A DNA stretch of 64,000 nt. Source: Macrostomum lignano (Eukaryota). Below, one piece after another: positions 6,267 through 61,701 of the stretch (its first letter is position 1; every line of letters begins with the position of its first letter). A model generated the notes under the pieces. It was not told the DNA's origin. It did not search any database and saw nothing but the letters and a program-made list of their open reading frames with translations. The stretch lies in NCBI GenBank assembly GCA_002269645.1, contig NIVC01000035.1, positions 558,001 to 622,000 of the forward strand, read 5' to 3'. The translations under genes were made by a program, and so were the position numbers.

Positions 6267-9200
6267 TTAGTTAAACTTCCACCGGTGACCGCACTCGTTG
6301 CACAGCACAAAGGTGGTCATTGGCTCATCAGCCGATCTGGTCTGCAGCTGATTATAAGTGCAATTGTTCTTCTTGCACTTGCCGCACTTCAACATATCGG
6401 TAGACGTGCCGCTGTTCATCGACATCTGGTGATCATCGATTGCTTCCTTGGTCAGCCGCTCCCTGAGCTTGCGCATATCGTCCGATGCCATCTCTTCCGC
6501 GCTCATCTTGGCAAACTGCGCCGGGGAGATATTCCCCATGAGGACGCAGTAGCGCAGATTAGGATTCTTCGTGTCGCGAAGGTTCATCACCCTGCTGCGG
6601 ATTCGATTCTTGTATTTCATGTCCAGCTTCGAGCCAGTCTCCAGGTGGACGCAGGTCTCAATCTCGGCGGCAAGGTAATTGGGCTCGTATGCTCCGGATG
6701 GGATTGTGTCTGATTCGAGTGCCTGGGTTCGGGTGGGGAGTTGGGAGAACTTGAATACTTAATTATTATCATTGGAACACTGATTAGGACAGGTGTGTGG
6801 GGATCACTGATTAGGACAGGTGTGTGGGGATCACTGATTAGGACAGGGGTGTGGGGATCACTGATTAGGACAGGGGTGTGGGGATCACTGATTAGGACAG
6901 GTGTGTGGGGAATTGGGATCACTGATTAGGACAGGTGTGTGGGGATCACTGATTAGGACAGGTGTGGGGATCACTGATTAGGACAGGTGTGTGGGGATCA
7001 CTGATTAGGACATAAAGAATCTATAATAGACAGGAAATATTGCGAATATTTTCAAATAAAAGAAGAGAAAGTACTTTACAAAAAACTGCTAACCTGTTGC
7101 AGCATTTCGCGGCACTTCAGCCGAACTGAATCGGTGGTTCGCAGTCTCTCGGACTCTTTAAAAGTGACGGCTGGAGCGGCTATGGCGGTGGTGGCGCCTT
7201 CGCTGCTTCCATTTGGACTGGCCTCTTCGTCTGCATCGACGCGAGGTCGTTTAGCCTCAGTGGTGTCGGCTCCGCTGCCATTCTCATCAGCTGTCGGTGA
7301 CGGCGCAGCAGCGGCAGCGGCCTGCTGTTGTTGCTGGGCAGAATCCAACAGCTTCTTCCATTTCTTAATAAGCTGTCGGGCTTCGGACAGCAGAGTGTCG
7401 GATTTGAGTCCGCGACGCAGACGATTCACAATAATGCCAAGGCCGGTTTTCTGCAGCACAGCTATGGTGATGCTGGCCTCGCGCAGCTGGGACAGGTAGC
7501 GGGCCACCTTGGCCTCATCCTGGGAGATTTAGACAGTTTGGTGCAATGGTTCTTTTCAAGGTATACGGATTAAGCTCTACATTTTTAGCAAATAATAAAA
7601 CTGTAGGGGCCATAGCCCAGTGGTCTAAATTCCTATGTTCCAGCGGCCCAGGCTTGATTCCAAGTGCAGTCGCATTAATTTGTGGATAGCTTAATTGGAA
7701 TCTCGGCTTGGCTCTGCTTGTGCAATTACTGGCCTTGAAGGCCAACCCAAAGGCACAGTGAAGTGTGCATGCCTAACAATCAAGTTAGGTCTGCTCTACA
7801 CTCTTGTGTCAGTGTGTAGTAGTGTGCCTAGCCCTATTGCAGCGCATGGCTTAAGTACGCCAGACGCCTACACAACCTGCGCCACGCTGTGAAATGACTT
7901 ACCTGTGAAAGAAACCTAAAGCAAAGTTAACGCAGTTTTGGGTAAACGGCAGGAGTAACTATGACTGTCTTATCAAGCCTAAATGCCTCGGCATCTAATT
8001 AGTACTGCGCCGCGCCATACTAATCGCCGCGCGCGTATGCGCCGCGCCGCGCCATATTAGATCCGCGCCGGACGCCGTCCGCCAAAATGCCCATGCGCTG
8101 CAATCAGGGTGCCTAGGTGAATATGAATAAATACATGTCTATATGCTTGCGTGCCTGCTCAAGAGAGTTGGCAGAATGGGTGGTAATGTGTTTTGCTAGT
8201 TGTGTAATAATGTCACTTAGTTGCGCTCAAAGCATAGGCAAATGAAAACAAAGAGCAAGAACCCTGAAGGAGGCAATTGAAGAGTTGAGGAAAAAGAGCA
8301 TTCTGAATAAAGTGGCATATTAGGATAAAACATAGTCTTTTGCCTCTATATTATTTTGTATATATGAATATGTATAATATGTGTAATTGAAGATAGAAGC
8401 TAAAGGGGTATCTACCTCTTTTGGTAAATAAAAAAGATCCAAGAAAAAAAATACTAAGGATAAGAAATAATTTTATTAAAGTATACATTTAGTAATTTAC
8501 TTTCTATTTCCTTTGACCAAAGCTTTATTTAAGTTTGGGTCTCTATCTTGAAGCTTATATTTAAATGATCTTTTGTAAGAGAACTTAACATTTTTTTAAT
8601 TTTAGAAATACAAAGCAAAGATTTTTTGTGAATAGTTTTTTAAACTAGTTTCTAAGAGCCATTTTTATAAGAGACAATATAGGCCCTCCTAGTTTATCAT
8701 TATCTAATACAAGCAATACAAAACACTTTTTAAGTTTTTCTTTATTTTTATTTTAGTAATTTCATTGCAAAGTTATTCATTAGGCTTAGTTTTTACTAAA
8801 ATTAGCTTTTTATATTAGGCCTATTCACGGCTATTGATATTGGCAAGTCATAGGCCTAAGATTGGCTAAGAACAGGTCTAAGACCCTCATTAAATAAAGT
8901 CCTTATGAGTTATGACCCCAATCATTGATTTAATCAAGTTAGGTCTAATAAACAATAATATAATTTAAGGCCTAACATTCTAAATAAATTTAGCTAAACT
9001 AAACCAGAAAAGATGAAGACAACTATTAATAATCTATGTATCATTTATTTTGTATTTATTTCAACAAGCATAATTGAAGTTCTAATCTAAGATGCTATTG
9101 CTAGCTTTAGTAAATAGAAATTTAGTCTAGAATAGACCTTACTTACATACTAATACTAATAATACTAGGCCTAGGTTAGGTTTTTATACTAATGTAGTAT

Positions 9201-10360: not shown

Positions 10361-13300
10361 ATGTCTATTAAACTTTGCTTATTCGTTCTATATTTATGCT
10401 GTATGACCATTTCTACTGGGATGGGTAAGAATAAAGGCTATAAAATGTAATGTCTGTACAAATTAAATTTTTTGATTAACTACTGATATATGTTCATAAA
10501 AAGCGTGCCTTTTCGTATGTGCCTTTTCATAAAATTGACTAATAAAATTAGTGTCATAACTAAATTCTGCGTTATAACAACCCATAGCAACATATATATA
10601 ACTTATAAGATTTGCAAAGTCATCTGAGCATCTCTTCATGCTGAATTTCAGGATCAAAAGTTCTGCTTGGCATTGATTTTGGCTCTGAGTACATAAAAGT
10701 GGCTGTCTTAAAGGTTTGAATTTTTAACCTTAATTTTCTATTGCCATTACATCCAGCAAAATAATTCAGGTTCCTTATTCATGCATATATTATGCTTAAA
10801 ATTTTAGCCAGGAAGACAATTAGAGATTGCATTAAACAGGTAATGTCATTTGTTTATAAACAGTAGAACTACCGAGAGGGGGTACATATATATTTTTTTT
10901 ATTGTCTGGCTCTCTGGACCGTCGAGATATTCAACGATTCCGCCAAAACGTCATCTTTCTCTAGTGCATTCAATGCACCCCTGTTCGTCAATCAGAACTG
11001 CACATCAGTGCAGCCTTGCCGAGCCACCAAATTTCATTAACACGTCGACCACTGTGTCACACAGACAGAGCTTCTGGACCTTCAACAGATGGCACCAGGT
11101 CACTATGGACACTCTGTTGCGAATTTCTTTGATGTCGCTGACCAAACTTCAATAATGTACAAATCTCAACCCGTTGAATTAGCTGGCGACGTCTGAATGA
11201 CGACTGAATGCCTCGAGACTTTTCGAGCATTCATCCAACCTTCTGGTAGAATCGTTTAAAATCTCAACGTTCCGGAAGACTGGCGACTTGATTCTTGTTC
11301 GAGAAGGTGCGCAACGAACATTTAGCATTCCGTGTTCTTCAATTTCGTGTGTCTGCGTTCTGCGTTCCGCGAGGCAGCAAAAAATTGTCAGAGGGGGGTT
11401 CTCCTCTCGGTAGTTCGACGGGCGGAAAGATGACTTGTTATTCCTATGCTGTTAAATCTTATTGAAACAATACTGACACATGAGATGTCTTTACAATCAA
11501 CCATGATGGCTAACATTTATATAAAAATTTTAGCGAAGCTCGGAGAAAAATGTCTACGGCAGTAGCTTTCAGAGACGGTGAACGTCTTATTGGTGACTCA
11601 GCTTTGTCTATGGTATGTTTCACACTCTTTATCAGTACTGTTATTGTACCAGAAAATGTACATCATCACTGTATAGCTAAATATGCCAGAATAAAACTCG
11701 CATTACTGGCAGGCAAAGAAGCACCCAGATCAGACCTTTCTGCACCTGCCGCTTCTACTTGGTTGCCAACTAAACAGTCCCATGGTGGAACTCTACCGTC
11801 AACGATATCCCCATCATCGAATAGTTGTTGGAGCGGACGGTACATTGGAGTTTCTACTTAGTGGGTAAGTATTCGAATCGGACCCCAGGTAGAATACGCT
11901 ACAGCCTTCTGAATTTCCGTATTCCAACCGAAGCAAGTCATTTTCAAGGACCACTAGAAGTTACCATTAATTTACAGAAATCTTCGCTTGTCTGTGGAGC
12001 AACTGTCTGCCATGCTACTAGAAGCAGCAATCGAGACGGCAAAAACATTTATAGACGACGATGTGGACAATTCTACAACTAGAAATGGCTCGAAAAGTGA
12101 ATTTGAAGTTGCCATAGCAACGCCGCCATTTTGGGGACAAGCGGAACGTGGCGCCATTCTGCGCGCTGCACAGTATGCCGGGATTCCAGCTGCTCGGCTG
12201 GTCAACAACAACGCTGCGGGTCAGTTGTGGCCAAACTGAGGCTGTCAGAGGCGTAGCTCTGGGTGTCAGTTGGTTGTCAGAGACGTAGCTTTGGGTGTCA
12301 GTTGGTTGTCTGAGGCGTAGCTTTGAGTGTCAGTTGGTTGTCAGAGCCGTAGCTTTGGGTGTCAGTGGGTTGTCAGAGGCGTAGCTTTGGGTGTCAGTTG
12401 GTTGTCATAGGCGTAGCTTTGGGTGTCAGTTGATTGTCAGAGACGTAGCTTTGGGTGTCAGTGGGTTGTCAGAGGCGTAGCTCTGAGTGTCAGTTGGTTG
12501 TCAGAGGCGTAGCTCTGGGTGTCAGTAGGTTGTCAGAGGCGTAGCTTTGGGTGTCAGTGGGTTGTCAGAGGCGTAGCTTTGGGTGTCAGTGGGTTGTCAG
12601 AGGCGTAGCTTTGGGTGTCAGTGGGTTGTCAGAGGCGTAGCTTTGGATGTCAGTGGGTTGTCAGAGGCGTAGCTTTGGGTGTCAGTGGGTTGTCAGAGGC
12701 GTAGCTTTGGGTGTCAGTGGGTTGTCAGAGACGTAGCTTTGGGTATCCGTTGGTTGTCAGAGGCGTAGCTTTGGGTGTCAGTTGGTTGTCAGAGGCGTAG
12801 CTTTGGGTGTTAGTTGGTTGTCAGAGCCGTAGCTTTGAGTGTCAGTTGGTTGTCAGAGCCGTAGCTTTGAGTGTCAGTTAGTTGTCAGGTGCATCATTTC
12901 AAGTGTCAGTTCGATGTTAATTGTGTCGTTATACTTGTCAGTTTTAAGGAAATTGGTTTAGGTACTATAAGTAGCTTGATCCAGTGAAGTGATAACTTTC
13001 AACCAAAATGGATTCCTCGCTTATTCGGTTTCAGTTGCTCTGAACTGTGGCAACAGCATCTTGTCAAGTCTGAGTTCCAAGCCTCAGTCGCGTACATTCT
13101 TCGATTTCGGCGCATCTTTTACTGTCAGCACTGCTGCATGTAAGTGCCCTGAGTGCAAGTAGGCAATCTGTCATCTAGATACAAGAACAGGCCTTCAAAA
13201 TCTGTCATCTAGATACAAGAACAGGCCTTCAAAATCTGTCATCTAGATACAAGAACAGGCCTTCGAAAATCTGTCATCTAGATACAAGAACAGGCCTTCA

Positions 13301-16300
13301 AAATCTGTCATCTAGATACAAGAACAGGCCTTCAAAATCTGTCATCTAGATACAATAACAGGCCTTCAAAATCTGTCATCTAGATACAATAACAGGCCTT
13401 CAAAATCTACCATCTAGATACAGTAACAGGCCTTCAAAATCTATCATCTAGATACAATAACAGGCCTTCAAAATCTGTCATCTAGATACAATAACAGGCC
13501 TTCAAAATCTGTCATCTAGATACAATAACAGGCCTTCAAAATCTGTCATCTAGATACAATAACAGGCCTTCAAAATCTGTCATCTAGATACAATAACAGG
13601 CCTTCAAAATCTGTCATCTAGATACAATAACAGGCCTTCAAAATCTACCATCTAGATACAATAACAGGCCTTCAAAATCTACCATCTAGATACAGTAACA
13701 GGCCTTCAAAATCTATCATCTAGATACAATAACAGGCCTTCAAAATCTATCATCTAGATACAATAACAGGCCTTCAAAATCTATCATCTAGATACAGTAA
13801 CAGGCCTTCAAAATCTACCATCTAGATACAATAACAGGCCTTCAAAATCTACCATCTAGATACAATAACAGGCCTTCAAAATCTACCATCTAGATACAGT
13901 AACAGGCCTTCAAAATCTATCATCTAGATACAATAACAGGCCTTCAAAATCTATCATCTACATACAATAACAGGCCTTCAAAATCTATCATCTAGATACA
14001 ATAACAGGCCTTCAAAATCTATCATCTAGATACAATAACAGGCCTTTAAAAAGATATTGACCCCCTAATATATTTTTAGCATATCAAAAAGTGACCGGTT
14101 CCAAGAATTTTCAAACCTACCTGCTGCGAATTCTTGGCACTGGTTACGACCCGGCGCTGGGCACCTTCGATTTTATTGAACGATTAATTAACGCCGGAAA
14201 ATCACCGGTTACTATGGACGCTAGTTCGGTTGCTAAGGCCCGAGTAGAAGCCGGGCAATTATTTCGGGTGCTCAGCGCCAATCGGCGAGCTGGTTCGATG
14301 ACACGAGACCAGCTGAGAACGAAGGTTGCGGACTTGTTGAACAGACTGAGGCGACCAGTTGAAATGATGACGTCATTGGCTGGTGACGTCACCCGTAGTA
14401 GCAGCAGCGATACGCTATTGATGGGCGGCGGATCCCGGTGTCCGCTGGTGCAAGAGGAGCTGATGAAATTCTTGGGAAGGTAAAATGGCACGGTTGGGAA
14501 GGGGTTGTTATGCGAATAACACCCATGAGAGCCAAGCCCCCCCCCCCGGCACAGAGGTTAATATGAGTTTTGTTTAATTTGAGTTCAATTAGGTTAGTTT
14601 AGTGTAGTTCGGTTTACAGTAGTTTAGATCAGTTTTGTCTTATTTAGTTGAGTTTAGTTAGTCCATTTTAGTTTGGTCCAGTTTAGTTTAGTTTAGTTTA
14701 GTTTAGCTTAGTTTAGTTTAGTTTATTTTAGTATAGTTTAGTTTAGTGTTGTTTAGTTTAGTTTAGTTTAGTATAGTTTAGTTTATTTCAGTTTAGTTTA
14801 GTTTAGTGTTGTTTAGTTTATTTTGGTGTAGTTTAGTTTAGTTTGGTTTAGTTTAGTTTAGTCTAATTTATTTTAGTTTAGTCTAATTTACTTAGCATAG
14901 TAGTTCAATTTGTGTAGTCATCAATTTTTTTACATGCAGCTCCAGACTGGGTCATTCGATCAACACTGATGAAGCTGCCGCGTTGGGAGCCGTTCAGCAT
15001 CTGGTTGCCATGGAAACTAATCGAGCTAGAAAGCGCCATTCACGTGACGGCGGATTTTCTAAGAGAAAATCTGGAACAGCGCAAATGCTATTGGTTGATG
15101 TCAATTTGTTCTCCGTGGCTGCCGTGAGTTCGGATTGACTTGCCTCACGGTTCCTTGCTTGTTGAGATAGGCAAGTGGGGTGAGAAGTGAGAGTAAAGAA
15201 GAGAGTAGATAAGAATAGAGTGTAGAATAGAGAAGGTAGAGTAGAGTGGTAGATGAGTGGAGAAGGTAGAGTAGAGCAGTAGATATGTGGAGGGGGTAGA
15301 GTGAAGAGTAGATAAGAAAATAGAGTAGAGTAGAGTAAAGAATAGAAAAGAGGAGATGGTAGAATAGAGAGTAGATAAGAGGAGAAAGTAGGGTGAAGAG
15401 TAGATAAGAGAATAGTGTAGAGTGAAGAATAGACAAGAGGACAGGGTAGAGTAGAGTGAAGAGTAGATAAGAGGACGGGGTAGAGTAGAGTGAAGAGTAG
15501 ATAAGAGGACAGGGTAGAGTAGAGTGAAGAGTAGATAAGAGGATAGGGTAGAGTAGAGTGGAGAGTAGATAAGAGGACAGGGTAGAGTAGAGTGGAGAGT
15601 AGATAAGAGGACAGGGTAGAGTAGAGTGGAGAGTAGATAAGAGGACAGGGTAGAGTTAGAGTGGAGAGTAGATTAGGGGAGAGAAGAGAGTAAAGAGTAA
15701 AGGAGAGGAGAGCAAAGGACAATGGAGACGAGATCTCGAGTGAAAAGTGCAAACAAAGTGCTAGTTATGCTACAAAGCATACCATCTCAAATAGTTAAAC
15801 TCTCCATCAAACCAGAGCGCCAACATCACAGGCTCTTATGTCAATCGTCAGTCGGTATTCAAAATTGGCGATCCAATTCCAAACAAGAAATCAATCAACT
15901 TCGAGACTGATGCTGCATCTTTACCTGATGAGTTTTGCATTGTCCTTGAATACCATAATACATCGAATTTGAACGAATTTCAGCGAAGGTAAGTAAATGC
16001 TTCTGCATGGCAACTAATTATCTCATAACAATTTGCAATACATAATAGCTAAAAATGCGTAAATCCTTATTTGTTTCAGGTGTCTTGGTGGTACTCTTCT
16101 GGTTAAATATTGTACTACCGAGTTTGATCGAATTCGAAATAAATTTAGAGCAAATTTTTCCAATATTTCTACTAATAGTAAACAAACTAGCATTGGAGCA
16201 CTTTTTAGACACGATAGCAGCGGAATTTTATGGTTAGATAAGCTAGAATTGATTGCTGATAAGATCGCTAATCAGCCAATTAGATTTCAACCGGTAAAAT

Positions 16301-18724
16301 ATGGCTATGCCGTGCCATCGGTGGAACAGCGACAGCATAGCAGAGATGTGTAAGTTGAGTTCGTATTTCTTTTTTTGTTAATATTTTCTATGAAACTATT
16401 TAGAATTGAAAAATTGATAGAGAACACATTGAAGGATGAGAGAGAGGGTAGCGGTGTCCAGATGAAGGATCAGAGAGAGGGTAGCGGTGTCCAGATGAAG
16501 GATCAGAGAGAGGGTAGCGGTGTCCAGATGAAGGATCAGAGAGAGGGTAGCGGTGTCCAGATGAAGGATCAGAGAGAGGGTAGCGGTGTCCAAATGAAGG
16601 ATCAGAGAGAGGGTAGCGGTGTCCAGATGAAGGATCAGAGAGAGGGTAGCGGTGTCCAGATGAAGGATCAGAGAGAGGGTAGCGGTGTCCAGATGAAGGA
16701 TCAGAGAGAGGGTAGCGGTGTCCAGATGAAGGATCAGAGAGAGGGTAGCGGTGTCCAGATGAAGGATCAGAGAGAGGGTAGCGGTGTCCAGATGGAGGAT
16801 CAGAGAGAGGGTAGCGGTGTCCAGATGGAGGATCAGAGAAATGGTAGCGGTGTCCAGATGAAGGATTAGCGGTAAGCTGCCAAACTAAGGACAGAAAGAC
16901 GATCTCAAACGAGCCCTCAAAAATCTCCAGCATTCTCGAGTTCCGTCGTCGCGAGCTCGAGACCCGAGCAGCATCGAAAATTCGCAACGATTTGGAAGCG
17001 GCGGTGATCGAATATCGAGCCAGGCTGTTCGGCGATGATAGCAGCGGTAACCATGACAACCAAATGAAAAATTCGAGCACAGTTCAACCGATATACTCCA
17101 GATGCTCGAGTAAAAAAGAACGCCAAGAACTTTTGGCTGCTTTGGCTAAGGCGGAACAGGCTTTAGCTGCGGGATCCTCGTCAAATTTAACGATGCTGAA
17201 TACCGAGTTGAAACGATTAAAACAAACTTTTGCTGCCGTCTCGGCCAGGGCAATCGAGTTGATGAAGCGCCCAGCTGCTCTGGCTAGCCTTGAGTCAGTT
17301 TTAAAATTGGCGGAGTCAAACATTTCTGCAACTGAAAAAGATTCAAAATTGATAGCCGAGACTAGGAGTGTGAAGGTGGGCGCCGATTTGATTTGTGCTT
17401 ATTTCTTAGAATTTCTAAGATTGGCCCTTTCTTAGAATAGTTTAGCCATTTCTTAGAATATCATTTGCACTTTCTTATAACCGTAAGCCATTTCTTAGAA
17501 TAGTAAGCCATTTCTTAGAATAGTCAGCCATTTCTTAGAATAGTAAGCCATTTCTTAGAATAGTAAGCCATTTCTTAGAATAGTAAGCAATTTCTTAGAA
17601 TAGTAAGCCATTTCTAAGAACCGTAAGCCATTTCTTAGAATAGTAAGCCATTTCTTAGAATAAAAAGCACTTTCGTGGAATATTAAGCACTTAAAAATCG
17701 ATCCAAACTCCCACAGAAGTGGCTCACAGCGGCCAAGGCAGCTCTGGTCAACGCCGATCTGACCCAGAATCCGCCAGTCTTGGTCCGTCAGATAGAATCA
17801 GAATACAAAAGCAAATTATTCAAAGCGGAGCAAAGTTTCGAAAAGACGCCTAAGCCATGAGCTGGAGGACAGCGATGAGGACGACACGCTGTCAGGTGCG
17901 AAGAAGAGCGCATCTTACGGTAGAAGTCACCAGGGTTCTAGACGTCCGTCTAGGTGTCTAGGGGTATAGGTGTCTAGAGGTATAGGTGTCTAAGGATATA
18001 GGTGTCTAGATGTCTAGGGGTTTAGGTGTCTATGGGGTCTAGGGGTATAGGTGTCTAGAAGTATAGGTGTCTAGGGGTCTAGGTGTCTAGGTGTCTAGTG
18101 GTCTAGGTGTCTAGGGGTCTAGGGGTCTAGGGGTCTAGGGGTCTAGGGGTCTAGGGGTCTAGGGGTCTAGGTGTCTAGGTGTCTAGGGGTCTAGGGTCTA
18201 GGGGTCTAGAGGTCTAGAGGTCTAGGGGTCTAGAGGTCTAGAGGTCTAGAGGTCTAGGGGTCTAGGGGTCTAGGGGTCTAGAGGTCTAGGGGCATATGTG
18301 TCTAGATGTCTAGGTGTCTAGCAACTCTGCATTGCTTCAGTTCACCCAGCTGTAAAATTTACCTATTAGCTGGGGTAATTGACGGTGTGTGTGGCGACCC
18401 CCCAGTCCTTGGACTGAACAGCCGTACGCAGCCTTCAGATGCGCCGCGCAATAGCTGCGGCTGAGCTGTCAGTTGCACATCTGGCCATTAGGGCAGGTGT
18501 AATCAATTATTATTATAATAATATTAGGCAAAAATCACACTTAATTCACCGAATATGAATATATTCCAGAATCTACTCGCCCAAGACGGTCTCTGCCGAG
18601 TGAGGACGAAGTTGAAGCAAGCGACGAGTCTGACAGCGACCATCCAGACTTGGATGATGATGACGATATTGATCGAGGAAATCGTCGCGACGTTGATTTT
18701 CATTCGCTAATTGGCGAACTTTAA
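10361..18724 (+). CDS. HYOU1: HYOU1/Grp170/ORP150-like ER Hsp70-family chaperone, divergent. Exons 10361-10424, 10652-10713, 10808-10839, 11534-11612, 11713-11864, 11978-12219, 13035-13139, 14080-14479, 14946-15123, 15795-15988, 16080-16349, 16931-17375, 17717-17860 (TGA); out-of-frame tail 17859-17895 plus 18570-18724
   Basis: Signal peptide MSIKLCLFVLYLCC; GIDFGSEYIKVAVLKPG; RRKMSTAVAFRDGERLIGDSA; FFDFGAS; LLMGGGSRCPLVQE; INTDEAAALGAV; FRHDSSGILWLD; RNDLEA. All 13 exons to the TGA are phase-consistent (788 aa). The terminal exon ends ...HSLIGEL*, followed by AATAAA at 18730. Confidence 0.9.
12240..12890 (+). repeat. Tandem array, 32-bp unit (HYOU1 intron 6)
   Basis: gtcagttggttgtcagaggcgtagctttgggt. 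Confidence 0.95.
13165..14045 (+). repeat. Tandem array, 34-bp unit (HYOU1 intron 7)
   Basis: tctgtcatctagatacaataacaggccttcaaaa. Confidence 0.95.
14560..14900 (+). repeat. (GTTTA)n microsatellite (HYOU1 intron 8)
   Basis: gtttagtttagttta. Confidence 0.95.
15185..15720 (+). repeat. Purine-rich tandem array, about 34-bp unit (HYOU1 intron 9)
   Basis: agagtagagtgaagagtagataagaggacagggt. Confidence 0.93.
16432..16866 (+). repeat. Tandem array, 33-bp unit (HYOU1 intron 11)
   Basis: gatgaaggatcagagagagggtagcggtgtcca. Confidence 0.95.
17428..17665 (+). repeat. Tandem array, 20-bp unit (HYOU1 intron 12)
   Basis: tttcttagaatagtaagcca. Confidence 0.93.
17945..18320 (+). repeat. 8-bp tandem repeat (last HYOU1 intron)
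   Basis: (aggggtct)n with aggtgtct/agaggtct variants. Confidence 0.93.
18325..18525 (+). mobile_element. 5'-truncated copy of the CORE-SINE
   Basis: gcattgcttcagttcacccagctgtaaaa...ttagctggggtaattga...ggcgacccccagtc.ttggactgaacagccgtacgcagccttc matches the reverse complement of 35790-35980. Confidence 0.82.
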
Positions 18725-18874
18725 AGTTTAATAAACTTCAACCGAGATTTTCTAGGGCTGACTGCAGTTCCTTATCCTGACTTTTGTGGTGGTTTTGGTA
18801 AGATTTTCACATTCTCCAAGCGAAATTTCACCTTTGCTAAATTCAACGGACTTTATTTAAACACCAGACTTAAA

Positions 18875-19270
18875 AATTCCCAAACTTCACAATTCCCCAA
18901 TCTTCACAATCCCCAATCTTCACAATTTCCCAATCTTCACAATTTCCCAATCTTCAAAATTTCCCAATCTTCACAATTTCCCAATCTTCACCATCCCCAA
19001 TCTTCACAATTTCCCAATCTTCACAATCCCCAATATTCACAATTTCCCAAACTTCACAATTTCCCAATCTTCACAATTTCCCAATCTTCACAATTTCCCA
19101 AACTTCACAATTTCCCAATCTTCACAATCCCCAATCTTCACAATTTCCCAATCTTCACAATCCCCAATCTTCACAATTTCCCAATCTTCACCATCCCCAA
19201 TCTTCACCATCCCCAATCTTCACAATATCCCAAACTTCACAATTTCTAAACTTCACAATTCTCAACCTTC
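18875..19270 (+). repeat. Tandem array, 16-17-bp unit
   Basis: tcccaatcttcacaatt. Confidence 0.93.
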
Positions 19271-19567: not shown

Positions 19568-20078
19568 TCTCCCTGCCTGTCTCTCCCTGCCTGTCTCTCC
19601 CTGCCTGTCTCTCCCTGCCTGTCTCTCCCTGCCTGTCTCTCCCTGCCTGTCTCTCCCTGCCTGTCTCTCCCTGCCTGTCTCTCCCTGCCTGTCTCTCCCT
19701 GCCTGTCTCTCCCTGCCTGTCTCTCCCTGCCTGTCTCTCCCTGCCTGTCTCTCCCTGCCTGTCTCTCCCTGCCTGTCTCTCCCTGCCTGTCTCTCCCTGC
19801 CTGTCTCTCCCTGCCTGTCTCTCCCTGCCTGTCTCTCCCTGCCTGTCTCTCCCTGCCTGTCTCTCCCTGCCTGTCTCTCCCTGCCTGTCTCTCCCTGCCT
19901 GTCTCTCCCTGCCTGTCTCTTTCTGCCTGTCTCTTTCTGCCTGTCTCTCCCTACCTGTCTCTCCCTACCTGTCTCTCCCTACCTGTCTCTCCCTGCCTGT
20001 CTCTCCCTGCCTGTCTCTCCCTGCCTGTCTCTCCCTGCCTGTCTCTCCCTACCTGTCTCTCCCTACCTGTCTCTCCCT
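19568..20078 (+). repeat. Tandem array, 14-bp unit
   Basis: ccctgcctgtctct. Confidence 0.95.
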
Positions 20079-20338
20079 GGCTACTAATTGAACATAATGC
20101 TATTTCGCCAAAAGTACATGAGCTACGAGTACTTTATATGACAACGAAATATTGCAGCGATACGGTCGCAGAGGGGAGTAACACTAGGCTTCTATCATAG
20201 ACTAAAATTTTATAGTTTTGTACTTAAACAGTAGATAGAGAATTGAGTAATTCAGCCAAGGTCAAACCCCCCAGAGAACCAGAGCGAGGAGGACACTTCA
20301 TCACTACCAGCTGATCCAGTAGCATTCCTTGAAGAAGC

Positions 20339-25212: not shown

Positions 25213-27231
25213 TCAGATATTCTCATAGTTCTGTTTGCTCCCAGTTGCCAAGCCTCTCACTTTAGCCGCGGTAAACGTCGCTCCATCCTTGACGTAGCCG
25301 GGCACAGAAATCCAGAAATTCAAGTTTGGCAACGCCTGCAAATTGGCCGTCTTCTTCAATAGAAAAACGTTTACAGCGAAGCCGCCCGCTAGGTAGACAA
25401 CCAGCAGGACCAGCACTATGATGATCAAAACGTCCCCGCCGCTCATGCCGCCGCCACCGCTGCCGCCGCCACCTCCACCGTCTACCTCACAGGCGTGCTT
25501 CGAAGTCAGCTTACTGTGGAATATAAACGGACTCGAAATTCCTCCATCGTCTGTGGGCTCAAACTTGTCCGTGGCGTCCGGCGAGCAGACCAGACTGACC
25601 ATGGACTCCCGGATGATCCCGCCACTCTGCTTATTGTCGTACTTGATGTACAAACCGTAGGTGCTGTCGTAACCAAACTTGGCCGTGCTCTGCAAGCCTA
25701 GCAGGAACTCCTGAAGAAGGACAGGGTTGGGTTGCTTCAATACCTGCCTTTTTTGGCTCTCTACAGCACGGAATGCTTCATTTGATCCTTCAACCTGATA
25801 ACAGGCATTCTCCCTAAATAGAAGCATCCCCAGCTAGCAAGCACCCCCCAATAGCAAGCACCCCCCAAATAGCAAGCATCCCCCAGATAGCAAGCACCCC
25901 TAGATAACAAGGATCCCCAGATAGCAAGCACCCCTAGATAACAAGGATCCCCAGATAGCAAGCACCCCTAGATAACAAGGATCCCCAGATAGCAAACACC
26001 CCCAGATAGCAAGGATCCCCAGATAGCAAGCACCCCCAGATAGCAAGCATCCCCCAGATAGCAAGCACCCCTAGATAACAACGATCCCCAGATAGCAAAC
26101 ACCCCAGATAGCAAGGATCCCCAGATAGCAAGCACCCCCAGATAGCAAGGATCCCCAGATAGCAAGCACCCCTAGATAACAAGGATCCCCAGATAGCAAA
26201 CACCCCCAGATAGCAAGGATCCCCAGATAGCAAGCACCCCCAGATAGCAAGCATCCCCCAGATAGCAAGCACCCCTAGATAACAACGATCCCCAGATAGC
26301 AAACACCCCAGATAGCAAGGATCCCCAGATAGCAAGCACCCCCAGATAGCAAGGATCCCCAGATAGCAAGCACCCCCAGATAGCAAGGATCCCCAGATAG
26401 CAAGCACCCCCAGATAGCAAGCACCCCTAGATAACAACGATCCCCAGATAACAAACACTCCCAGATAGCAAGCATCCCCCAGATAGCAAGGATCCCCAGA
26501 TAACAAACACTCCCAGATAGCAAGCATCCCCCAGATAGCAAGCACCCCTAGATAGCAAGCACCCCCCCCCCAAATAGCAAGCATCCCCCAGACAGCAAGC
26601 ACCCCCAGATAGCAAGCACCCACCCCAAATTGCTCCCCCAAATCTTTTAGCTCTCCCTATGTAAGAGACGCTCTGGTCCTCAGAGCACTAAAACTTATAA
26701 ACGACACCTGCAGTAAGAGGTTTGAGGGACATGTGACTTCAAGCTGCAGACATATTGAGACACATTGCACTAGAGCATGTAAAATCTGGGCCCACCGGTC
26801 ATTTGCACCTCCATCAGCCCTCTTGGATCGAGGTTAAATCAATAAACAGACAAGATTGTCTCACCTGGGAGCCCGCAGCGGAATTCTGACAACTAGCCGC
26901 GTCACTGCCAGACTCGCATTGAACACCAGTGCACGGATTGTAAGAGTACAGCCAGTTCCGATTCGGTCCCAGAATCCGCTTGAATTGAAAACCGCTAGCA
27001 CTGGCTATCGGTGACAGATCGATGAACTTTCCCGAGCTGGTCTCGCATTTGCAGTTGTTTATCTGCTTCACGCAAGTTACCTGAGAGCGGCACATTAGCA
27101 GTGAGTACATGCATACTAGCAAACAGTTTCTTAATTCTATACTTAGGATGATTCAACAGCTAAAACACATTTACCTGCTGACTATGGACTGCAGAAAATA
27201 TCGATACGAAGATTAATATTTTTGGGTGCAT
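25213..27231 (-). CDS. Cation-dependent mannose-6-phosphate receptor/ATG27-like type I membrane protein (one MRH domain), 256 aa; exons 27231-27175, 27080-26865, 25710-25213
   Basis: Signal peptide MHPKILIFVSIFSAVHS; MRH motifs IDLSPI, YSYNPC, SLVCSP, LTSKHAC; TM segment VLIIIVLVLLVVYLAGGFAV; cytosolic LPNLNFW..VPGYVKDG and a C-terminal YENI tyrosine sorting motif. Confidence 0.82.
25825..26630 (+). repeat. Tandem array, about 17-bp unit (M6PR-like intron 2)
   Basis: cagatagcaagcacccc / cagatagcaaggatccc. Confidence 0.94.
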
Positions 27232-29054: not shown

Positions 29055-37220
<8,166 letters not shown>

Positions 37221-45315: not shown

Positions 45316-45429
45316 TTGACCGGCTGGTTCTCCTTTATTGCCGTCTGGGTCCTGCAGCTCTTTGTTGAAGATTTTGAAGCTTTATTGTTTCTGAAACCAT
45401 TTATATTTTATATTTGCTTGGTTTCAAGT

Positions 45430-45450
45430 TTTATCTGCCTGTCTGCCTGC

Positions 45451-45481
<31 letters not shown>

Positions 45482-45515
45482 CCTGTCTGTCTGTCTGTCT
45501 GTCTGTCTGTCTGCC

Positions 45516-45548
<33 letters not shown>

Positions 45549-45643
45549 GCCTGTCTGTCTGCCTGTCTGTCTGTCTGTCTGCCTGCCTGCCTGTCTGCCT
45601 GTCTGTCTGCCTGTCTGTCTGTCTGTCTGTCTGTCTGTCTGCC

Positions 45644-45676
<33 letters not shown>

Positions 45677-45678
45677 GC

Positions 45679-45724
<46 letters not shown>

Positions 45725-45725
45725 T

Positions 45726-45760
<35 letters not shown>

Positions 45761-45836
45761 TAGTGTCCATCTGTCTTAGTGTCTGTCTGTCTGTCTGTCC
45801 GTCCATCTGTCTGTCTGTCTGTCTGTCTGTCCGTCC

Positions 45837-45900
<64 letters not shown>

Positions 45901-45967
45901 TAGTGTCCATCTGTCTTAGTGTCTGTCTGTCTGTCTGTCTGTCCGTCCGTCTGTCTGTCTGTCTGCC

Positions 45968-46018
<51 letters not shown>

Positions 46019-46033
46019 GTCTGTGTGTGTGTG

Positions 46034-46109
<76 letters not shown>

Positions 46110-46110
46110 C

Positions 46111-46144
<34 letters not shown>

Positions 46145-46155
46145 GTCTGTGTGTG

Positions 46156-46224
<69 letters not shown>

Positions 46225-46235
46225 GTCTGTGTGTG

Positions 46236-46276
<41 letters not shown>

Positions 46277-46279
46277 GCC

Positions 46280-46366
<87 letters not shown>

Positions 46367-46435
46367 GTCTGTCTGTCTGTCTGTGTGTCTGTCTGTCTGT
46401 CGACTGTCTGTCTGTCTGTCTGTCTGTCTGTCTGC

Positions 46436-46483
<48 letters not shown>

Positions 46484-46490
46484 GTGTCTG

Positions 46491-46523
<33 letters not shown>

Positions 46524-46534
46524 GTCTGTGTGTG

Positions 46535-46613
<79 letters not shown>

Positions 46614-46624
46614 GTCTGTGTGTG

Positions 46625-46657
<33 letters not shown>

Positions 46658-46692
46658 GTCTGTGTGTGTGTCTATCTGTCTATCTGTCTGTG

Positions 46693-46772
<80 letters not shown>
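45430..46772 (+). repeat. (TCTG)n microsatellite, 1.3 kb, downstream of ADISSP
   Basis: tctgtctgtctg with cctg, gtgt and cttagtg interruptions. Confidence 0.97.
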
Positions 46773-46776
<4 letters not shown>

Positions 46777-47509
46777 CAGCAAATTAATTTTCAGTCTGCT
46801 AATCTGTCTTCATCTGTACTATATTATTTATTCAGCACTCATTAATGGTGATTTACTTGACCCCCTGTCAATTTATCCGTGTGGCAATATTGCCTGTTAG
46901 GCACTGTGATTTGTCTAGCAAATAAAACACTTTAAAGTCGCCGTTTTAATCCTAAACCATTTCTAGTCACTGTTAGCTGTTTTACAAGACAATTCTTTAA
47001 ATTTATTGTCTGCATAAAAATGTGACCCAATTGGAATATCCATAGTGATTCAATGTGTTTTATTCAAGTCAGTTACCATTCATCACCAAAAATTTTTTTC
47101 AAATTTTTTTGTCAGTGTGAATTAATTGACTGTTATTATTAATTTGTGTACTTTTCGTTTCAAATAAATTTATTTACTTTAGTCCACATGACGTGTAATC
47201 TAAAACTTTTCTCAAGAATGATTTTCTCAAGTCTAGACAAGATGCCGCTTCACTGAAAAGTTCAAGGAGACTACATGTATTATGATTACAAGGAGAGTGA
47301 ATCGAAGTGCAGCAAATTAGTTTTTGAGTGAATTCTATGACTGGTAAACCCTAAATATAATCAATCAATCAATCAATCAGTATTGGTTCTGTGTGCTGAC
47401 AGACGCTTGTCAAAAATATTTGTCTCAATGATAAATAGACAGTTTCTAAGTGACCGCTATTGATTACTGCGATCTAGGATGCCTTAAAAATGAACGCCCC
47501 AGCCCCTAG

Positions 47510-50370: not shown

Positions 50371-50480
50371 TGGAATTCTAGTGTATAGGCCTGTATATTC
50401 CTAGAAAACATTGCCGTATTGATTCAGTGACAGGTAGGAATTTACGCTGCAATTTCAATTTTAAAATCAGACGCCTCAAA

Positions 50481-53400
50481 ATGGGCAAGAACAAGAAAGA
50501 CAAGAAGAAAGGTCACGGAGCGGAGAAGACCGCCGCCAAAACTGAACGCAAAGCCGCTAAAAAAGCTTCGAAAGCGGCAAAAACTGCCGGAGAAGATGAT
50601 GTAGCAGCTGTGATAGCTCAGCTAGAAGCTGAGGAGGCTGCAAAATGGCGACCACTGATGGAGCTAACCGAACCTGCCAACGGCGACAGCGAGTTTCGCC
50701 CTTCGCCTAGAAGTAATTTCAGTTGGACTGCGAATTCTCGCCGATCAGAGATTTACCTGTTCGGTGGAGAGCAGCGGCTGCCGGAGACTGGGAGGCTGAA
50801 AGTGCTCAATGAGCATCTGGTCTATAGGCCGGTTGAAAACCGGTGGATTCGACTGGGTGGCGGCACTTTGCCAACGCCTAGGTGTGCGCATCAGGTGAGA
50901 TTACCTTCTCTCCGAGAATCGCGCTTCCGCGACCTTGAGAATCGCCTTTCCCTTTTTCCCGACCTTGAAGATCGCCCTACTGCACCCTTGAGAATCGCCC
51001 TACTGCACCCTTGAGAATCGCCCTACTGCACCCTTGAGAATCGCCCTACTGCACCCTTCAGAATCGCCCTACTGCACCCTTGAGAATCGCCCTACTGCAC
51101 CCTTCAGAATCGCCCTACTGCACCCTTGAGAATCGCCCTACTGCACCCTTGAGAATCGCCCTACTGCACCCTTCAGAATCGCCCTACTGCACCCTTGAGA
51201 ATCGCCCTACTGCACCCTTGAGAATCGCTCTACTGCACCCTTGAGAATCGCCCTACTGCACCCTTCAGAATCGCCCTACTGCACCCTTGAGAATCGCTCT
51301 ACTGCACCCTTGAGAATCGCCCTACTGCACCCTTCAGAATCGCCCTACTGCACCCTTGAGAATCGCTCTACTGCACCCTTGAGAATCGCCCTACTGCACC
51401 CTTGAGAATCGCTCTACTGCACCCTTGAGAATCGCCCTACTGCACCCTTGAGAATCGCCCTACTGCACCCTTGAGAATCGCCCTACTGCACCCTTGAGAA
51501 TCGCTCTACTGCACCCTTCAGAATCGCCCTACTGCACCCTTGAGAATCGCCCTACTGCACCCTTGAGAATCGCTCTACTGCACCCTTGAGAATCGCTCTA
51601 CTGCACCCTTGAGAATCGCCCTACCGCGACCTTGAGAATCGCCCTACCGCGACCTTGAGAATCGCCCTACCGCGACCTTGAGAATCGCCCTTCCCCACCT
51701 GTCCACAGGCGACCATGGCCAAGCCGCCCTCAGGCTCAGGCGATCATTTGTTCGTATTCGGAGGCGAGTTCGCCACTCCAACCGAGTCGCAGTTCCATCA
51801 CTACGATGATATCTGGTCTTGGACCGTAAAGTCGCGTCAGTGGCGCAAAGTGACCCCGGCCTCGGGCAGCCCGGCCCCCTGTCCTCGCAGCGGTCACCGA
51901 ATGCTGGCCCTGAAACGACCCCAAGTTCGTCTCCTAGTATTTGGCGGTTTCCATGACAACGGCCGCACGTTTCGCTATTTCAACGATCTGTGGTCGTTTG
52001 ATTTGGATACTCGAGTCTGGACTGAGATTCGAACCACTGGCTCGCAGCCCAGTCCTCGGTCTGCCTGCCTGCTGTTTCCTCTGCCTGACGACTCCGGCAT
52101 CTGCTTGGTTGGCGGCTACGCTAAGCGGACTGAGAAACGCGGCGAGAAGGGCTTGGTGCACACTGACTGCTTCACTCTGAGCTTAGTGGGTGAGTGCTTA
52201 CTGACTGCTTCACTCTGAGCTTAGTGGGTGAGTGCTTACTGACTGCTTCACTCTGAGCTTAGTGGGTGAGTGCATACTGACTGCTTCACTCTGAGCCTAG
52301 TGGGTGAGTGCTTACTGACTGCTTCACTCTGAGCTTAGTGGGTGAGTGCTTACTGACTGCTTCACTCTGAGCTTAGTGGGTGAGTGCTTACTGACTGCTT
52401 CACTCTGAGCTTAGTGGGTGAGTGCATACTGACTGCTTCACTCTGAGCTTAGTGGGTGAGTGCTTACTGACTGCTTCACTCTGAGCTTAGTGGGTGAGTG
52501 CTTACTGACTGCTTCACTCTGAGCTTAGTGGGTGAGTGCTTACTGACTGCTTCACTCTGAGCTTAGTGGGTGAGTGCTTACTGACTGCTTCACTCTGAGC
52601 TTAGTGGGTGAGTGCTTACTGACTGCTTCACTCTGAGCTTAGTGGGTGAGTGCTTACTGACTGCTTCACTCTGTGCTTAGTGGGTGAGTGCCTCTGGCCT
52701 CCAAGATCCTCAGTTGCTGGGCAGCCAGCCTCCCAGATCCCCTGGGCCAGTCTCCCAGATCCTCAGTTGCTGGGCAGCCAGCCTCCCAGATCCCCTGGGC
52801 CAGCCTCCCAGATCCCCTGGGCCAGCCTCCCAGATCCTCAGTTGCTGGGCAGCCAGCCTCCCAGATCCTCAGTTGCTGGGCAGCCAGCCTCCCAGATCCT
52901 CAGTTGCTGGGCAGCCGGCCTCCCAGATCCTCAGTTGCTGGGCAGCCAGCCTCCCAGATCCCCTGGGCTGGGCCAGTCTCCCAAATCCTCAGTTGCGGGG
53001 CCAGCCAAGTGTTTTTAGTCGACAAGCTGGTTTCGACTAGATTAGCTACTGCAATACACTCCGCATTGTCTCCAAAACCTATTGGTTTAGTTGCGTCCCC
53101 CGCCCGCCCGGTGCAAGCGCGGCAGTGCAGGCTGCAGAGGGTAAACACGCAAAAACGTGAATAGGTTAACTGGAACAGCTTGCTAAGGCATGCCCGATTG
53201 CGGGCCGCAGTCGAGAGGAACTGTTTTCGGGCGTGGCTCAGGTCGACCGTGTCTAGGAAAACTCAATCAGGCCCGCCTCTGCTAGATAGCAACTGGCTGC
53301 TTGTGTCTAACGATGCGGCCACTGCCTTGCCATCTGTTACTCGTAGCTGTTTCACTGTGTACCTTTTTCCGCTTTTTTATTAGCCTGCCTTGGTTATCTC

Positions 53401-61579: not shown

Positions 61580-61656
61580 CTGTCTGTCTCTCTGTGTGTC
61601 TGTCTGTCTGTCTTAGTGTCTGTCTGTCTGTCTGTCTGTCTTAGTGTCTGTCTTAG

Positions 61657-61701
<45 letters not shown>

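What the first reader, a model, noticed from the sequence alone, without database searches (positions are those of the whole stretch)
17717..18724. HYOU1 stops at CCA-TGA but its acidic, xxEL-ending tail continues in the +1 frame
Seen: exon 13 reads KWLTAAKAAL...NPPVLVRQIESEYK...EKTPKP-TGA (17858-17860), homologous to the Grp170 C-terminal region. Skipping one base (T17858) gives GAG CTG GAG GAC...: ELEDSDEDDTLS, a phase-1 donor at 17896 (or 17920), and a matching phase-1 exon 18570-18724 ending DFHSLIGEL*, then AATAAA. Established: Grp170s end in an ER-retention xDEL-type signal, and antizyme uses +1 frameshifting at a codon-UGA site. Short introns in this window are 91-118 nt, so a micro-intron fix is unlikely. 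Inference, alternatives: (a) a programmed +1 frameshift giving retained versus secreted chaperone; (b) an alternative acceptor at TAG 17793-17795 or CAG 17799-17801 that enters the +1 frame directly; (c) a 1-nt assembly error or a pseudogenising allele.
Basis: partly seen in the sequence, partly recalled or inferred. Interest (0 to 1): 0.72.

Follow-up and report, generated by a model that had tools for sequence, protein, structure and literature searches.

The report
One-base frame break in chaperone gene
A flatworm (Macrostomum lignano) gene for an ER chaperone is intact except for one extra base near its end; this is most likely an assembly error or a defect in one of several gene copies, not a programmed ribosomal frameshift.

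Summary
The window is Macrostomum lignano DNA. It holds a 14-exon, signal-peptide-bearing, very divergent Grp170/HYOU1-like gene (10361-18724, + strand). Its reading frame is unbroken for 772 codons and then meets TGA at 17858-17860. The +1 frame continues as ELEDSDEDDTLS, uses the good donor after 17895 and the phase-1 acceptor at 18570, and ends ...DFHSLIGEL*, with AATAAA 6 nt later.

CCA-TGA is not a privileged site. Removing any one of 65 bases (17793-17860) restores the same 835-codon ORF, and that stretch holds six homopolymer runs. I found no frameshift signal: CCA is not a known antizyme P-site codon, the spliced mRNA downstream folds no better than shuffles, and Rfam gives no hit. The UniProt model A0A1I8HP21 hides the break with a 43-nt non-consensus "intron", while the gene's 13 real introns are 100-940 nt.

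Both public assemblies share one PacBio data set, have documented ORF-breaking base errors, and come from a recently duplicated genome. The best reading is an ordinary 1-nt indel, either a consensus error or a copy-specific lesion (about 0.88). A splicing bypass is about 0.08 and a programmed +1 frameshift about 0.02. No reads, transcripts or paralogue DNA could be reached, so error versus real allele stays open.

The parts
10361..18724 (+). Whole Grp170/HYOU1-like gene of Macrostomum lignano. Its 14 exons are E1 10361-10424, E2 10652-10713, E3 11089-11156, E4 11534-11612, E5 11713-11864, E6 11978-12219, E7 13035-13139, E8 14080-14479, E9 14940-15123, E10 15816-15988, E11 16149-16349, E12 16931-17375, E13 17717-17895 and E14 18570-18724.
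   Evidence: The model was built from splice sites, UniProt fragments P0001 and P0003 and an insect HYOU1 HMM. All 13 introns are GT-AG and 100-940 nt long. The ORF is unbroken for 772 codons. Full-length identity to insect HYOU1 is 27-29%.
10361..10424 (+). Exon 1: start codon and a signal-peptide-like N-terminus, MSIKLCLFVLYLCCMTISTG.
   Evidence: An in-frame stop lies 9 codons upstream. Kyte-Doolittle mean is 2.75 over residues 5-15. The phase-1 donor ATGG|GTAAGA joins exon 2, which encodes GIDFGSEYIKVAV, the phosphate-1 loop. No dedicated signal-peptide predictor was available.
16931..17375 (+). Exon 12: C-terminal helical (lid) domain.
   Evidence: It matches insect HYOU1 HMM positions 704-783 (hmmsearch E 1.6e-7) and hhalign columns 688-783 (E 5.8e-5). 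It is 100% identical to UniProt A0A1I8HP21.
17376..17716 (+). Intron 12 (341 nt; GTGGGC...CCCACAG), mostly a 20-nt minisatellite.
   Evidence: TRF finds 17424-17688, period 20, 13.1 copies.
17717..17857 (+). Exon 13, frame-0 part: KWLTAAK...SFEKTPKP (47 codons).
   Evidence: It continues exon 12 in phase 0.
17858..17860 (+). Frame-0 TGA stop, preceded by CCA and followed by G, lying 35 nt before the last exon junction.
17793..17860 (+). Permissive window: removing any one of 65 bases here restores a single ORF through to IGEL*.
   Evidence: The enumeration gives 37 distinct proteins. The +1 frame is open from 17796.
17807..17810 (+). A4 homopolymer inside the permissive window. Other runs: A3 at 17813-15, 17822-24 and 17832-34, and T3 at 17836-38.
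   Evidence: These are typical sites of long-read consensus indels or replication slippage (own knowledge).
17841..17844 (+). Second A4 homopolymer, 14 nt before the TGA. Losing one A gives ...AEQSFERRLSHELEDSD...
17859..17895 (+). Exon 13, +1-frame part: ELEDSDEDDTLS plus the first base of a Glu codon, followed by the donor CAG|GTGCGA.
   Evidence: Per-codon coding scores are positive from 17859 onward.
17783..17825 (+). The 43-nt 'intron' (GTCCGT...TCAAAG) used by UniProt model A0A1I8HP21 to jump from frame 0 to +1.
   Evidence: tblastn of P0001 against the window. Its ends do not match the species motifs GT[GA]AG and CAG (PMC8629364). All 13 real introns of the gene are at least 100 nt.
17835..17840 (+). 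Weak alternative donor AAA|GTTTCG (exon end 17834). It is phase 1 in frame 0 and would give ...KAEQ-K-STRPRR...IGEL without any frameshift. A second such site is TCC|GTCAGA (exon end 17786).
   Evidence: A similar weak donor, AAG|GTTTGA, is inferred for real intron 2.
17868..17893 (+). 7-bp hairpin (GACAGCG, 12-nt loop, CGCTGTC) starting 7 nt after the TGA.
   Evidence: Seen in the folds of the spliced mRNA. The energy is not different from dinucleotide shuffles (z 0.01 for 60 nt, 0.34 for 90 nt, -0.83 for 120 nt).
17896..18569 (+). Intron 13 (674 nt), largely an 8-nt minisatellite (GTCTAGGG).
   Evidence: TRF finds 17948-18321, period 8, 46.8 copies.
18570..18724 (+). Exon 14: acidic tail STRPRRSLPSEDEV...DVDFHSLIGEL followed by TAA (18722-18724).
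   Evidence: The acceptor is TTCCAG. The whole +1-frame tail (17859-17895 plus exon 14) is 63 residues with 26 Asp/Glu. Its codon usage matches the rest of the gene (0.29 vs 0.27 bits per codon). It is part of P0001.
18730..18735 (+). AATAAA polyadenylation-type hexamer, 6 nt after the TAA.

Best explanation
The locus is a Macrostomum lignano gene for a very divergent, ER-targeted Grp170/HYOU1-type chaperone. The intended product is about 835 residues: signal peptide, Hsp70-type nucleotide-binding domain, substrate-binding and helical domains, then a 63-residue acidic tail ending ...HSLIGEL.

As assembled, the penultimate exon carries one base too many somewhere in 17793-17860. Frame 0 therefore runs into TGA at 17858, and the tail lies in the +1 frame. 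I take this to be an ordinary one-base indel that the ribosome does not decode in any special way. My own split is two sub-cases:
- About 0.5: a consensus error of the long-read assembly. Six homopolymer runs lie in the permissive stretch.
- About 0.38: a very young frameshift lesion in one of the several near-identical copies this recently duplicated genome holds. That copy would make a 772-residue protein lacking the retrieval signal.

Shown: the gene model, the frame break, the intact coding-like tail, and the absence of recoding signals. Inferred: that the extra base is artefactual or copy-specific.
For: 1. Organism and locus. UniProt M. lignano models P0001 and P0003 map at 100% to the window.
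2. The gene is otherwise flawless. It has 14 exons, 13 GT-AG introns, 772 uninterrupted codons, a start codon with a hydrophobic signal-like N-terminus, and NBD motifs. It is not an old pseudogene, and there is just one defect.
3. The tail is still a perfect ORF with the gene's codon usage, correct splice phases, an xxEL end and AATAAA. This is what an error or a very recent lesion predicts.
4. Sixty-five different single-base removals give the same result, and A4, A4, A3 (three times) and T3 runs lie in that stretch. The stop-codon position of the 'shift' is therefore an artefact of how it was read.
5. Both public assemblies were built from the same PacBio reads. REAPR rates only 32% (ML2) and 64% (Mlig_3_7) of bases error-free. 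Mapped transcripts have broken ORFs in both, and 180 Mb lies in duplicated blocks at least 95% identical (PMC5730564). The species is a recent hidden polyploid with excess paralogues (PMC10468722). At least three copies of this gene's NBD part exist (P0003, P0007, P0008).
6. No recoding signals were found.
Against: - The same break is implied by the ML2-derived UniProt model. If the window comes from the other assembly, Mlig_3_7, the extra base survived Pilon polishing with Illumina DNA and RNA-seq reads. That would favour a real base over a consensus error. I could not tell which assembly the window is from.
- If the frame-0 ending KTPKP is genuine, the extra base sits in a non-homopolymer context, where consensus errors are rarer. 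It resembles by eye the WKPKVKP that follows the last helix of insect HYOU1, but the resemblance is not significant.
- No reads, transcripts or DNA of the other copies could be examined, so nothing here directly shows an indel.
Confidence: 0.88

Rival explanations
1. Programmed +1 ribosomal frameshift. With CCA in the P site and UGA in the A site, a fraction of ribosomes skip U17858 and read GAG CUG... This would yield an ER-retained 835-residue form beside a 772-residue form without a retrieval signal.
For: - A 0-frame UGA lies directly before an open, coding-like +1 frame whose product supplies the xxEL end expected of an ER-resident chaperone with a signal peptide.
- The stop is only 35 nt from the last junction, so by the 50-55 nt rule the mRNA need not be degraded (own knowledge).
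- A 7-bp hairpin starts 7 nt after the stop.
- Annotators are known to hide true shift sites behind invented splice sites (PMC1874602), as the UniProt model does here.
Against: - The sequence does not single out the site (65 equivalent positions).
- CCA is not among the seven natural antizyme P-site codons, and M. lignano's antizyme uses UUU-UGA. After a +1 shift, tRNA-Pro cannot re-pair on CAU (own knowledge).
- G after UGA is not a leaky context (own knowledge).
- Folding energy 3' of the site equals that of shuffles, and there is no Rfam element.
- The prior is very low: outside antizyme, cellular +1 recoding is rare in animals, whereas broken ORFs are documented in these assemblies.
Confidence: 0.02
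2. The stop is bypassed by splicing, with no frameshift needed. There are three options:
- A weak upstream donor (exon end 17834, AAA|GTTTCG, or 17786) joins exon 14 in frame.
- The 43-nt segment 17783-17825 is removed, as in UniProt A0A1I8HP21.
- An internal acceptor (17796 or 17802) enters the +1 frame directly.
The TGA-containing form would then be a minor or retained isoform.
For: - All these junctions keep an ORF to IGEL*.
- A comparably weak donor, AAG|GTTTGA, is inferred for real intron 2.
- A gene model using the 43-nt intron exists in UniProt.
Against: - None of the sites matches the species motifs GT[GA]AG or CAG. The donor after 17895 has CAG|GTG, and the acceptors at 17716 and 18569 are CAG.
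- 43 nt is less than half the shortest of the gene's 13 introns, which is 100 nt.
- Using the upstream donors would discard ELEDSDEDDTLS. That stretch shows clear 3-nt periodicity, has positive coding scores, and ends exactly at a strong phase-compatible donor.
- The micro-intron and the internal acceptors would delete part of the last helical segment.
Confidence: 0.08
3. The stop is genuine and useful. This copy has become a paralogue that makes a shorter chaperone which is not retrieved to the ER (secreted or post-ER), and the tail is a fresh relic.
For: Several copies exist, the gene is otherwise intact, and the PTC is near the last junction.
Against: - The tail shows no decay at all, so there has been no time for a new function to be selected.
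- No alternative poly(A) hexamer follows the TGA.
- There is no evidence of expression.
Confidence: 0.02

Closest known systems
Antizyme (OAZ) +1 programmed ribosomal frameshift
   Same: A 0-frame UGA sits directly before an ORF continuing in +1, and the second ORF has no start codon of its own.
   Different: [quoted passage not shown] They have conserved 5' modules and often a 3' pseudoknot or stem-loop, and are conserved from yeast to mammals (PMC1874602). Here the codon is CCA, no stimulator is detectable, conservation could not be tested, and the shift position itself is not defined.
Canonical Grp170/HYOU1 (insect HYOU1 ending HTEL; human NDEL and yeast Lhs1 HDEL from my own knowledge)
   Same: Signal peptide, Hsp70-type NBD, helical C-terminal domain, and an acidic unstructured tail ending in xxEL. 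The gene is collinear over its full length with 16 insect HYOU1 proteins.
   Different: Identity is only 27-29%. The gene lacks a 14-residue NBD segment and the long acidic insertion of the substrate-binding domain. The tail ends IGEL, with a non-canonical residue at -4 (PMC2140024). The tail is out of frame in this assembly.
Annotation 'frame-fix' introns
   Same: UniProt A0A1I8HP21 removes 43 nt so that two frames fuse. This resembles the Cryptococcus antizyme annotation that deleted 31 nt to hide a shift site (PMC1874602).
   Different: In the antizyme case ESTs proved the frameshift real. Here no transcript evidence is available, and an indel is the more likely cause.
Euplotes-type +1 frameshifting at stop codons (own knowledge, not tested)
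   Same: A stop codon in the A site triggers a +1 shift.
   Different: It is known in ciliates with altered termination, at AAA-UAA or AAA-UAG motifs, and affects many genes. Nothing comparable is known for flatworms.

Membership tests
Grp170/HYOU1 (ER branch of the Hsp110/Grp170 group, Hsp70 superfamily) | Hsp70-type nucleotide-binding domain | tested here: met
   Pfam PF00012 hits on exon translations (E 3.2e-7 and 8.9e-6). The best solved relative of P0003 is the HSP105 NBD (E 6.5e-15). The motifs IDFGSEY, DFGAS and GGGSRCP are present.
Grp170/HYOU1 (ER branch of the Hsp110/Grp170 group, Hsp70 superfamily) | Collinear similarity to HYOU1 through the substrate-binding and C-terminal helical domains | tested here: met
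   Eleven exon segments hit an insect HYOU1 HMM in order, positions 27 to 783. Exon 12 scores E 1.6e-7 and 5.8e-5. Exon 13 alone is not significant.
Grp170/HYOU1 (ER branch of the Hsp110/Grp170 group, Hsp70 superfamily) | N-terminal signal peptide | tested here: met
   MSIKLCLFVLYLCCMTISTG has hydropathy 2.75 over residues 5-15 and an upstream in-frame stop. This rests on inspection only; no signal-peptide predictor was available.
Grp170/HYOU1 (ER branch of the Hsp110/Grp170 group, Hsp70 superfamily) | C-terminal KDEL-type retrieval signal | tested here: inconclusive
   The frame-0 product ends KTPKP, with no signal. The +1 tail ends IGEL: -1 Leu and -2 Glu fit, and Gly at -3 is tolerated in reporter tests. 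Ile at -4 is not among the residues reported as efficient there (K, R, H, N, F, W, Y) (PMC2140024).
Grp170/HYOU1 (ER branch of the Hsp110/Grp170 group, Hsp70 superfamily) | Long acidic insertion in the substrate-binding domain (characteristic, not strictly defining) | tested here: not met
   The alignment with 16 insect HYOU1 proteins shows the roughly 100-column insertion absent from the M. lignano protein.
Antizyme-type +1 programmed frameshift site | 0-frame stop (usually UGA) in the A site with ORF2 open in +1 | tested here: met
   However, any 1-nt insertion within the preceding 65 nt produces the same picture.
Antizyme-type +1 programmed frameshift site | Shift-prone P-site codon | tested here: not met
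   The codon is CCA. [quoted passage not shown]
Antizyme-type +1 programmed frameshift site | 3' stimulatory RNA structure | tested here: not met
   The spliced mRNA 3' of the site gives z 0.01, 0.34 and -0.83 against dinucleotide shuffles. No Rfam match reaches E below 4.
Antizyme-type +1 programmed frameshift site | Conservation of the two-frame arrangement in orthologues and paralogues | not testable with these tools
   No relative of the C-terminal part was found outside two M. lignano fragments, among 5.8e9 and 1.84e9 proteins. No DNA of other copies was retrievable.
Antizyme-type +1 programmed frameshift site | Trans-frame protein product | not testable with these tools
   This needs proteomics or a reporter assay.
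Spliceosomal intron (the 43-nt segment of UniProt A0A1I8HP21) | Splice-site consensus and a length typical of the species | tested here: not met
   The ends GTCCGT...AAAG compare with GT[GA]AG and CAG in about 65% and 60% of M. lignano sites. The length is 43 nt against 100-940 nt for the gene's 13 introns.

The most novel reading that the evidence does not exclude
CCA-UGA-G at 17855-17861 is a genuine +1 recoding site. It would split the output of a flatworm Grp170-like chaperone between a non-retrieved 772-residue form and an ER-retained 835-residue form ending IGEL. This would be a second cellular +1 frameshift in animals besides antizyme, and one used to set protein localisation.
Probability: 0.02. 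Interest if true: 0.8.

Novelty: not a real feature. Interest (0 to 1): 0.1.

Why it matters
If it were a true recoding site, it would be a rare new case of +1 frameshifting in animals, and one that controls ER retention of a chaperone. As it stands, the value is practical:
- It flags a probable base error or a copy-specific lesion in a M. lignano assembly.
- It shows that UniProt A0A1I8HP21 ("Max-binding protein MNT") and A0A1I8HN27 are fragments of one 14-exon Grp170-like gene, the former patched with an invented 43-nt intron.
- It gives a corrected gene model.
- It is a reminder that "stop codon followed by an open +1 frame" is exactly what any single-base insertion produces.

Tried and rejected
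- **DNA of other copies or transcripts.** Exact look-ups of P0001 and P0002 found nothing on record. The spliced 772-residue product was not accepted for look-up.
- **Relatives of the C-terminal part.** The word-indexed search gave only two M. lignano fragments. phmmer over 1.84e9 representatives added only two spurious hits. The PDB search gave nothing below E 0.1.
- **Locating the frame switch by homology.** The full HMM and hhalign alignments stop at the end of exon 12 for every variant tested. A mini-HMM of the insect block around DREVKYLVNKxKIWKPK scored the frame-0 peptide no better than shuffles. I therefore withdrew the by-eye matches (PVxL..I, KSKLFK~KIKLWK, KTPKP~WKPKVKP) as evidence.
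- **Locating it by codon usage.** Scores in the 62-nt overlap were 1.36 (frame 0) against -0.39 (+1), far inside the noise.
- **Selenocysteine or readthrough of TGA.** Rejected: frame 0 has a second TGA six codons on, and it reaches the donor in the wrong phase, giving ...IYSPKTVSAE*.
- **Old pseudogene.** Rejected: 772 codons and 26 splice sites are intact.
- **Literature.** A search for frameshifting in Macrostomum or HYOU1 found only the antizyme survey and a mitochondrial COI case.
Full report
**What the window is**

A search with the conceptual C-terminus returned two Macrostomum lignano UniProt entries. P0001 (A0A1I8HP21, 244 aa) maps at 100% identity to 16932-17375, 17717-17782, 17826-17895 and 18570-18721. 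P0003 (A0A1I8HN27, "Hypoxia up-regulated protein 1") maps to 11713-14435. The window is therefore M. lignano nuclear DNA. The two database proteins are fragments of one gene.

**Check of the observation**

- Frame 0 of exon 13 (from 17717) reads KWLTAAK...SFEKTPKP and stops at TGA 17858-17860.
- The +1 frame is open from 17796 and reads ...HELEDSDEDDTLS up to the donor CAG|GTGCGA (last exon base 17895), which is phase 1 in that frame.
- Exon 14 (18570-18724, acceptor TTCCAG, phase 1) ends DFHSLIGEL-TAA.
- AATAAA follows at 18730-18735. No other + strand AATAAA lies between the TGA and that point.

**The gene**

I built a full model using an HMM of 16 insect HYOU1 proteins, the UniProt fragments and the splice signals.
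- It has 14 exons from ATG 10361 to TAA 18724.
- It has 13 GT-AG introns of 100-940 nt.
- It has 772 uninterrupted codons up to the TGA.

The N-terminus MSIKLCLFVLYLCCMTISTG is strongly hydrophobic and is preceded by an in-frame stop. Exon 2 encodes the phosphate-1 loop. Pfam HSP70 and the HSP105 NBD are the best domain and structure matches. Exon 12 aligns with the HYOU1 C-terminal helical domain (E 1.6e-7 and 5.8e-5). Overall identity to insect HYOU1 is 27-29%. The long acidic insertion of the substrate-binding domain is missing.

So this is a very divergent, apparently ER-targeted Grp170-like gene that is intact apart from one frame break. It is not an old pseudogene. A signal-peptide-bearing Grp170 is expected to end in a KDEL-type signal. 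Insect HYOU1 proteins end in HTEL/HSEL-type signals. That expected signal is exactly what the +1 tail supplies (IGEL), so the tail is very probably the gene's true or ancestral C-terminus. Its codon usage equals that of the rest of the gene (0.29 vs 0.27 bits per codon).

**Where is the shift?**

The sequence does not say. Deleting any one of 65 bases between 17793 and 17860 yields a single ORF ending IGEL*, with 37 distinct junction peptides. T17858 is only the last-but-two of these. The stretch contains A4 (17807-10), A4 (17841-44), three A3 runs and a T3 run.

"CCA-TGA with an open +1 frame" is what any one-base insertion in the preceding 20 codons would look like. I tried to narrow the position in two ways, and both failed:
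- By homology, exon 13 cannot be aligned significantly to the insect profile.
- By codon usage, the difference between frames is inside the noise.

**Tests for recoding signals**

[quoted passage not shown] M. lignano's own antizyme uses UUU-UGA (PMC1874602). CCA is not in the set.
- In the spliced mRNA, the 60, 90 and 120 nt after the stop fold no better than dinucleotide shuffles (z 0.01, 0.34, -0.83). The 60 nt before it are also unremarkable (z -0.48).
- A 7-bp hairpin 7 nt downstream is within that expectation.
- Rfam has no match.
- Conservation could not be tested. No relative of this C-terminus exists in the protein collections outside M. lignano, and no DNA of other copies could be fetched.

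**Splicing alternatives**

The UniProt model joins the frames by removing 17783-17825. That segment is 43 nt with GTCCGT...AAAG ends. The species motifs are GT[GA]AG and CAG (PMC8629364), and the shortest real intron of this gene is 100 nt. It looks like a gene-predictor patch, of the kind the antizyme survey warns about.

Two weak phase-1 GT sites in frame 0 (exon ends 17786 and 17834) would also reach exon 14 in frame. A similarly weak donor seems to be used at intron 2. But these sites would discard ELEDSDEDDTLS, which has clear coding periodicity and ends at the best donor in the right phase. I give all splicing routes together about 0.08.

**Context that sets the prior**

- ML2 and Mlig_3_7 were both built from the same PacBio data.
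- REAPR% and 64% of their bases error-free.
- Mapped transcripts have broken ORFs in both assemblies.
- 180 Mb of Mlig_3_7 lies in duplicated blocks at least 95% identical (PMC5730564).
- M. lignano is a recent hidden polyploid with an excess of two-copy genes (PMC10468722).
- At least three near-identical versions of this gene's NBD part are in UniProt.

A one-base consensus error, or a one-base lesion tolerated in a redundant copy, is therefore common in this material. Cellular +1 recoding in animals is, to my knowledge, essentially confined to antizyme.

**Verdict**

- Ordinary 1-nt indel: about 0.88. My split is about 0.5 assembly or consensus error and about 0.38 a real, very young copy-specific frameshift.
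- Splicing bypass: about 0.08.
- Programmed +1 frameshift: about 0.02.
- Functional truncated paralogue: about 0.02.

What remains open is error versus real allele. Two points lean towards a real base. The break is also implied by the ML2-derived UniProt model. And if the window is Mlig_3_7, the extra base survived Pilon polishing. Neither point could be verified here. Read mapping and comparison with the other copies and with M. cliftonense and M. hystrix would settle it.

Noticed in passing
window 16931-18724 and 11713-14435: UniProt A0A1I8HP21 is named 'Max-binding protein MNT' but is the C-terminal fragment (exons 12-14) of the Grp170-like gene. A0A1I8HN27 ('HYOU1') is exons 5-8 of the same gene. 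The gene was split and partly misnamed in the ML2 annotation.
   Followed up: yes
window 16430-16866, 17424-17688, 17948-18321, 18877-19270, 19568-20079: The last three introns and the 3' flank of the gene are each filled by a different minisatellite: 33 nt x13, 20 nt x13, 8 nt x47, 17 nt x23 and 14 nt x37. Several are open in multiple frames and mimic ORFs.
   Followed up: partly
window 10361-18724: The Grp170-like protein is unusually divergent. It is 27-29% identical to insect HYOU1. It lacks a 14-residue NBD segment (IEGLLDEQDFK region) and the acidic insertion of the substrate-binding domain. phmmer of its C-terminal 244 aa finds no relative outside M. lignano among 1.84e9 representatives.
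   Followed up: partly
window 17858-17895: The frame-0 stop lies only 35 nt upstream of the last exon-exon junction. By the 50-55 nt rule known from vertebrates, the mRNA would escape junction-dependent nonsense-mediated decay, so a truncated protein could accumulate if the base is real.
   Followed up: no
window 18695-18724: The tail ends DFHSLIGEL, whereas insect HYOU1 proteins end (D/E)xH(T/S)EL. The flatworm ending looks like HS-EL with three residues (LIG) inserted, which makes a non-canonical retrieval signal.
   Followed up: no
window 6270-7528 (-), 25216-25833 (-), 32844-33812 (-), 50382-57702 (+): Neighbouring genes by Pfam: TFIIS (central domain, Zn ribbon, N-terminal bundle), an ATG27/mannose-6-phosphate-receptor-like protein, Meckelin/TMEM67, and a Kelch-repeat protein spread over at least three exons.
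   Followed up: partly
window 57714-61268: A tandem array of about 3.5 kb is open for 1185 codons on the + strand and 857 codons on the - strand. It is repeat sequence, not an obvious gene.
   Followed up: no
window 32820-33220, 45400-46900, 61600-62070: Long ACAG/GACA-type microsatellite arrays (translating as TDRQ or CLSV repeats) recur three times in the window.
   Followed up: no
whole window: AATAAA occurs 106 times on both strands against 48 +/- 7 expected from dinucleotide shuffles.
   Followed up: no
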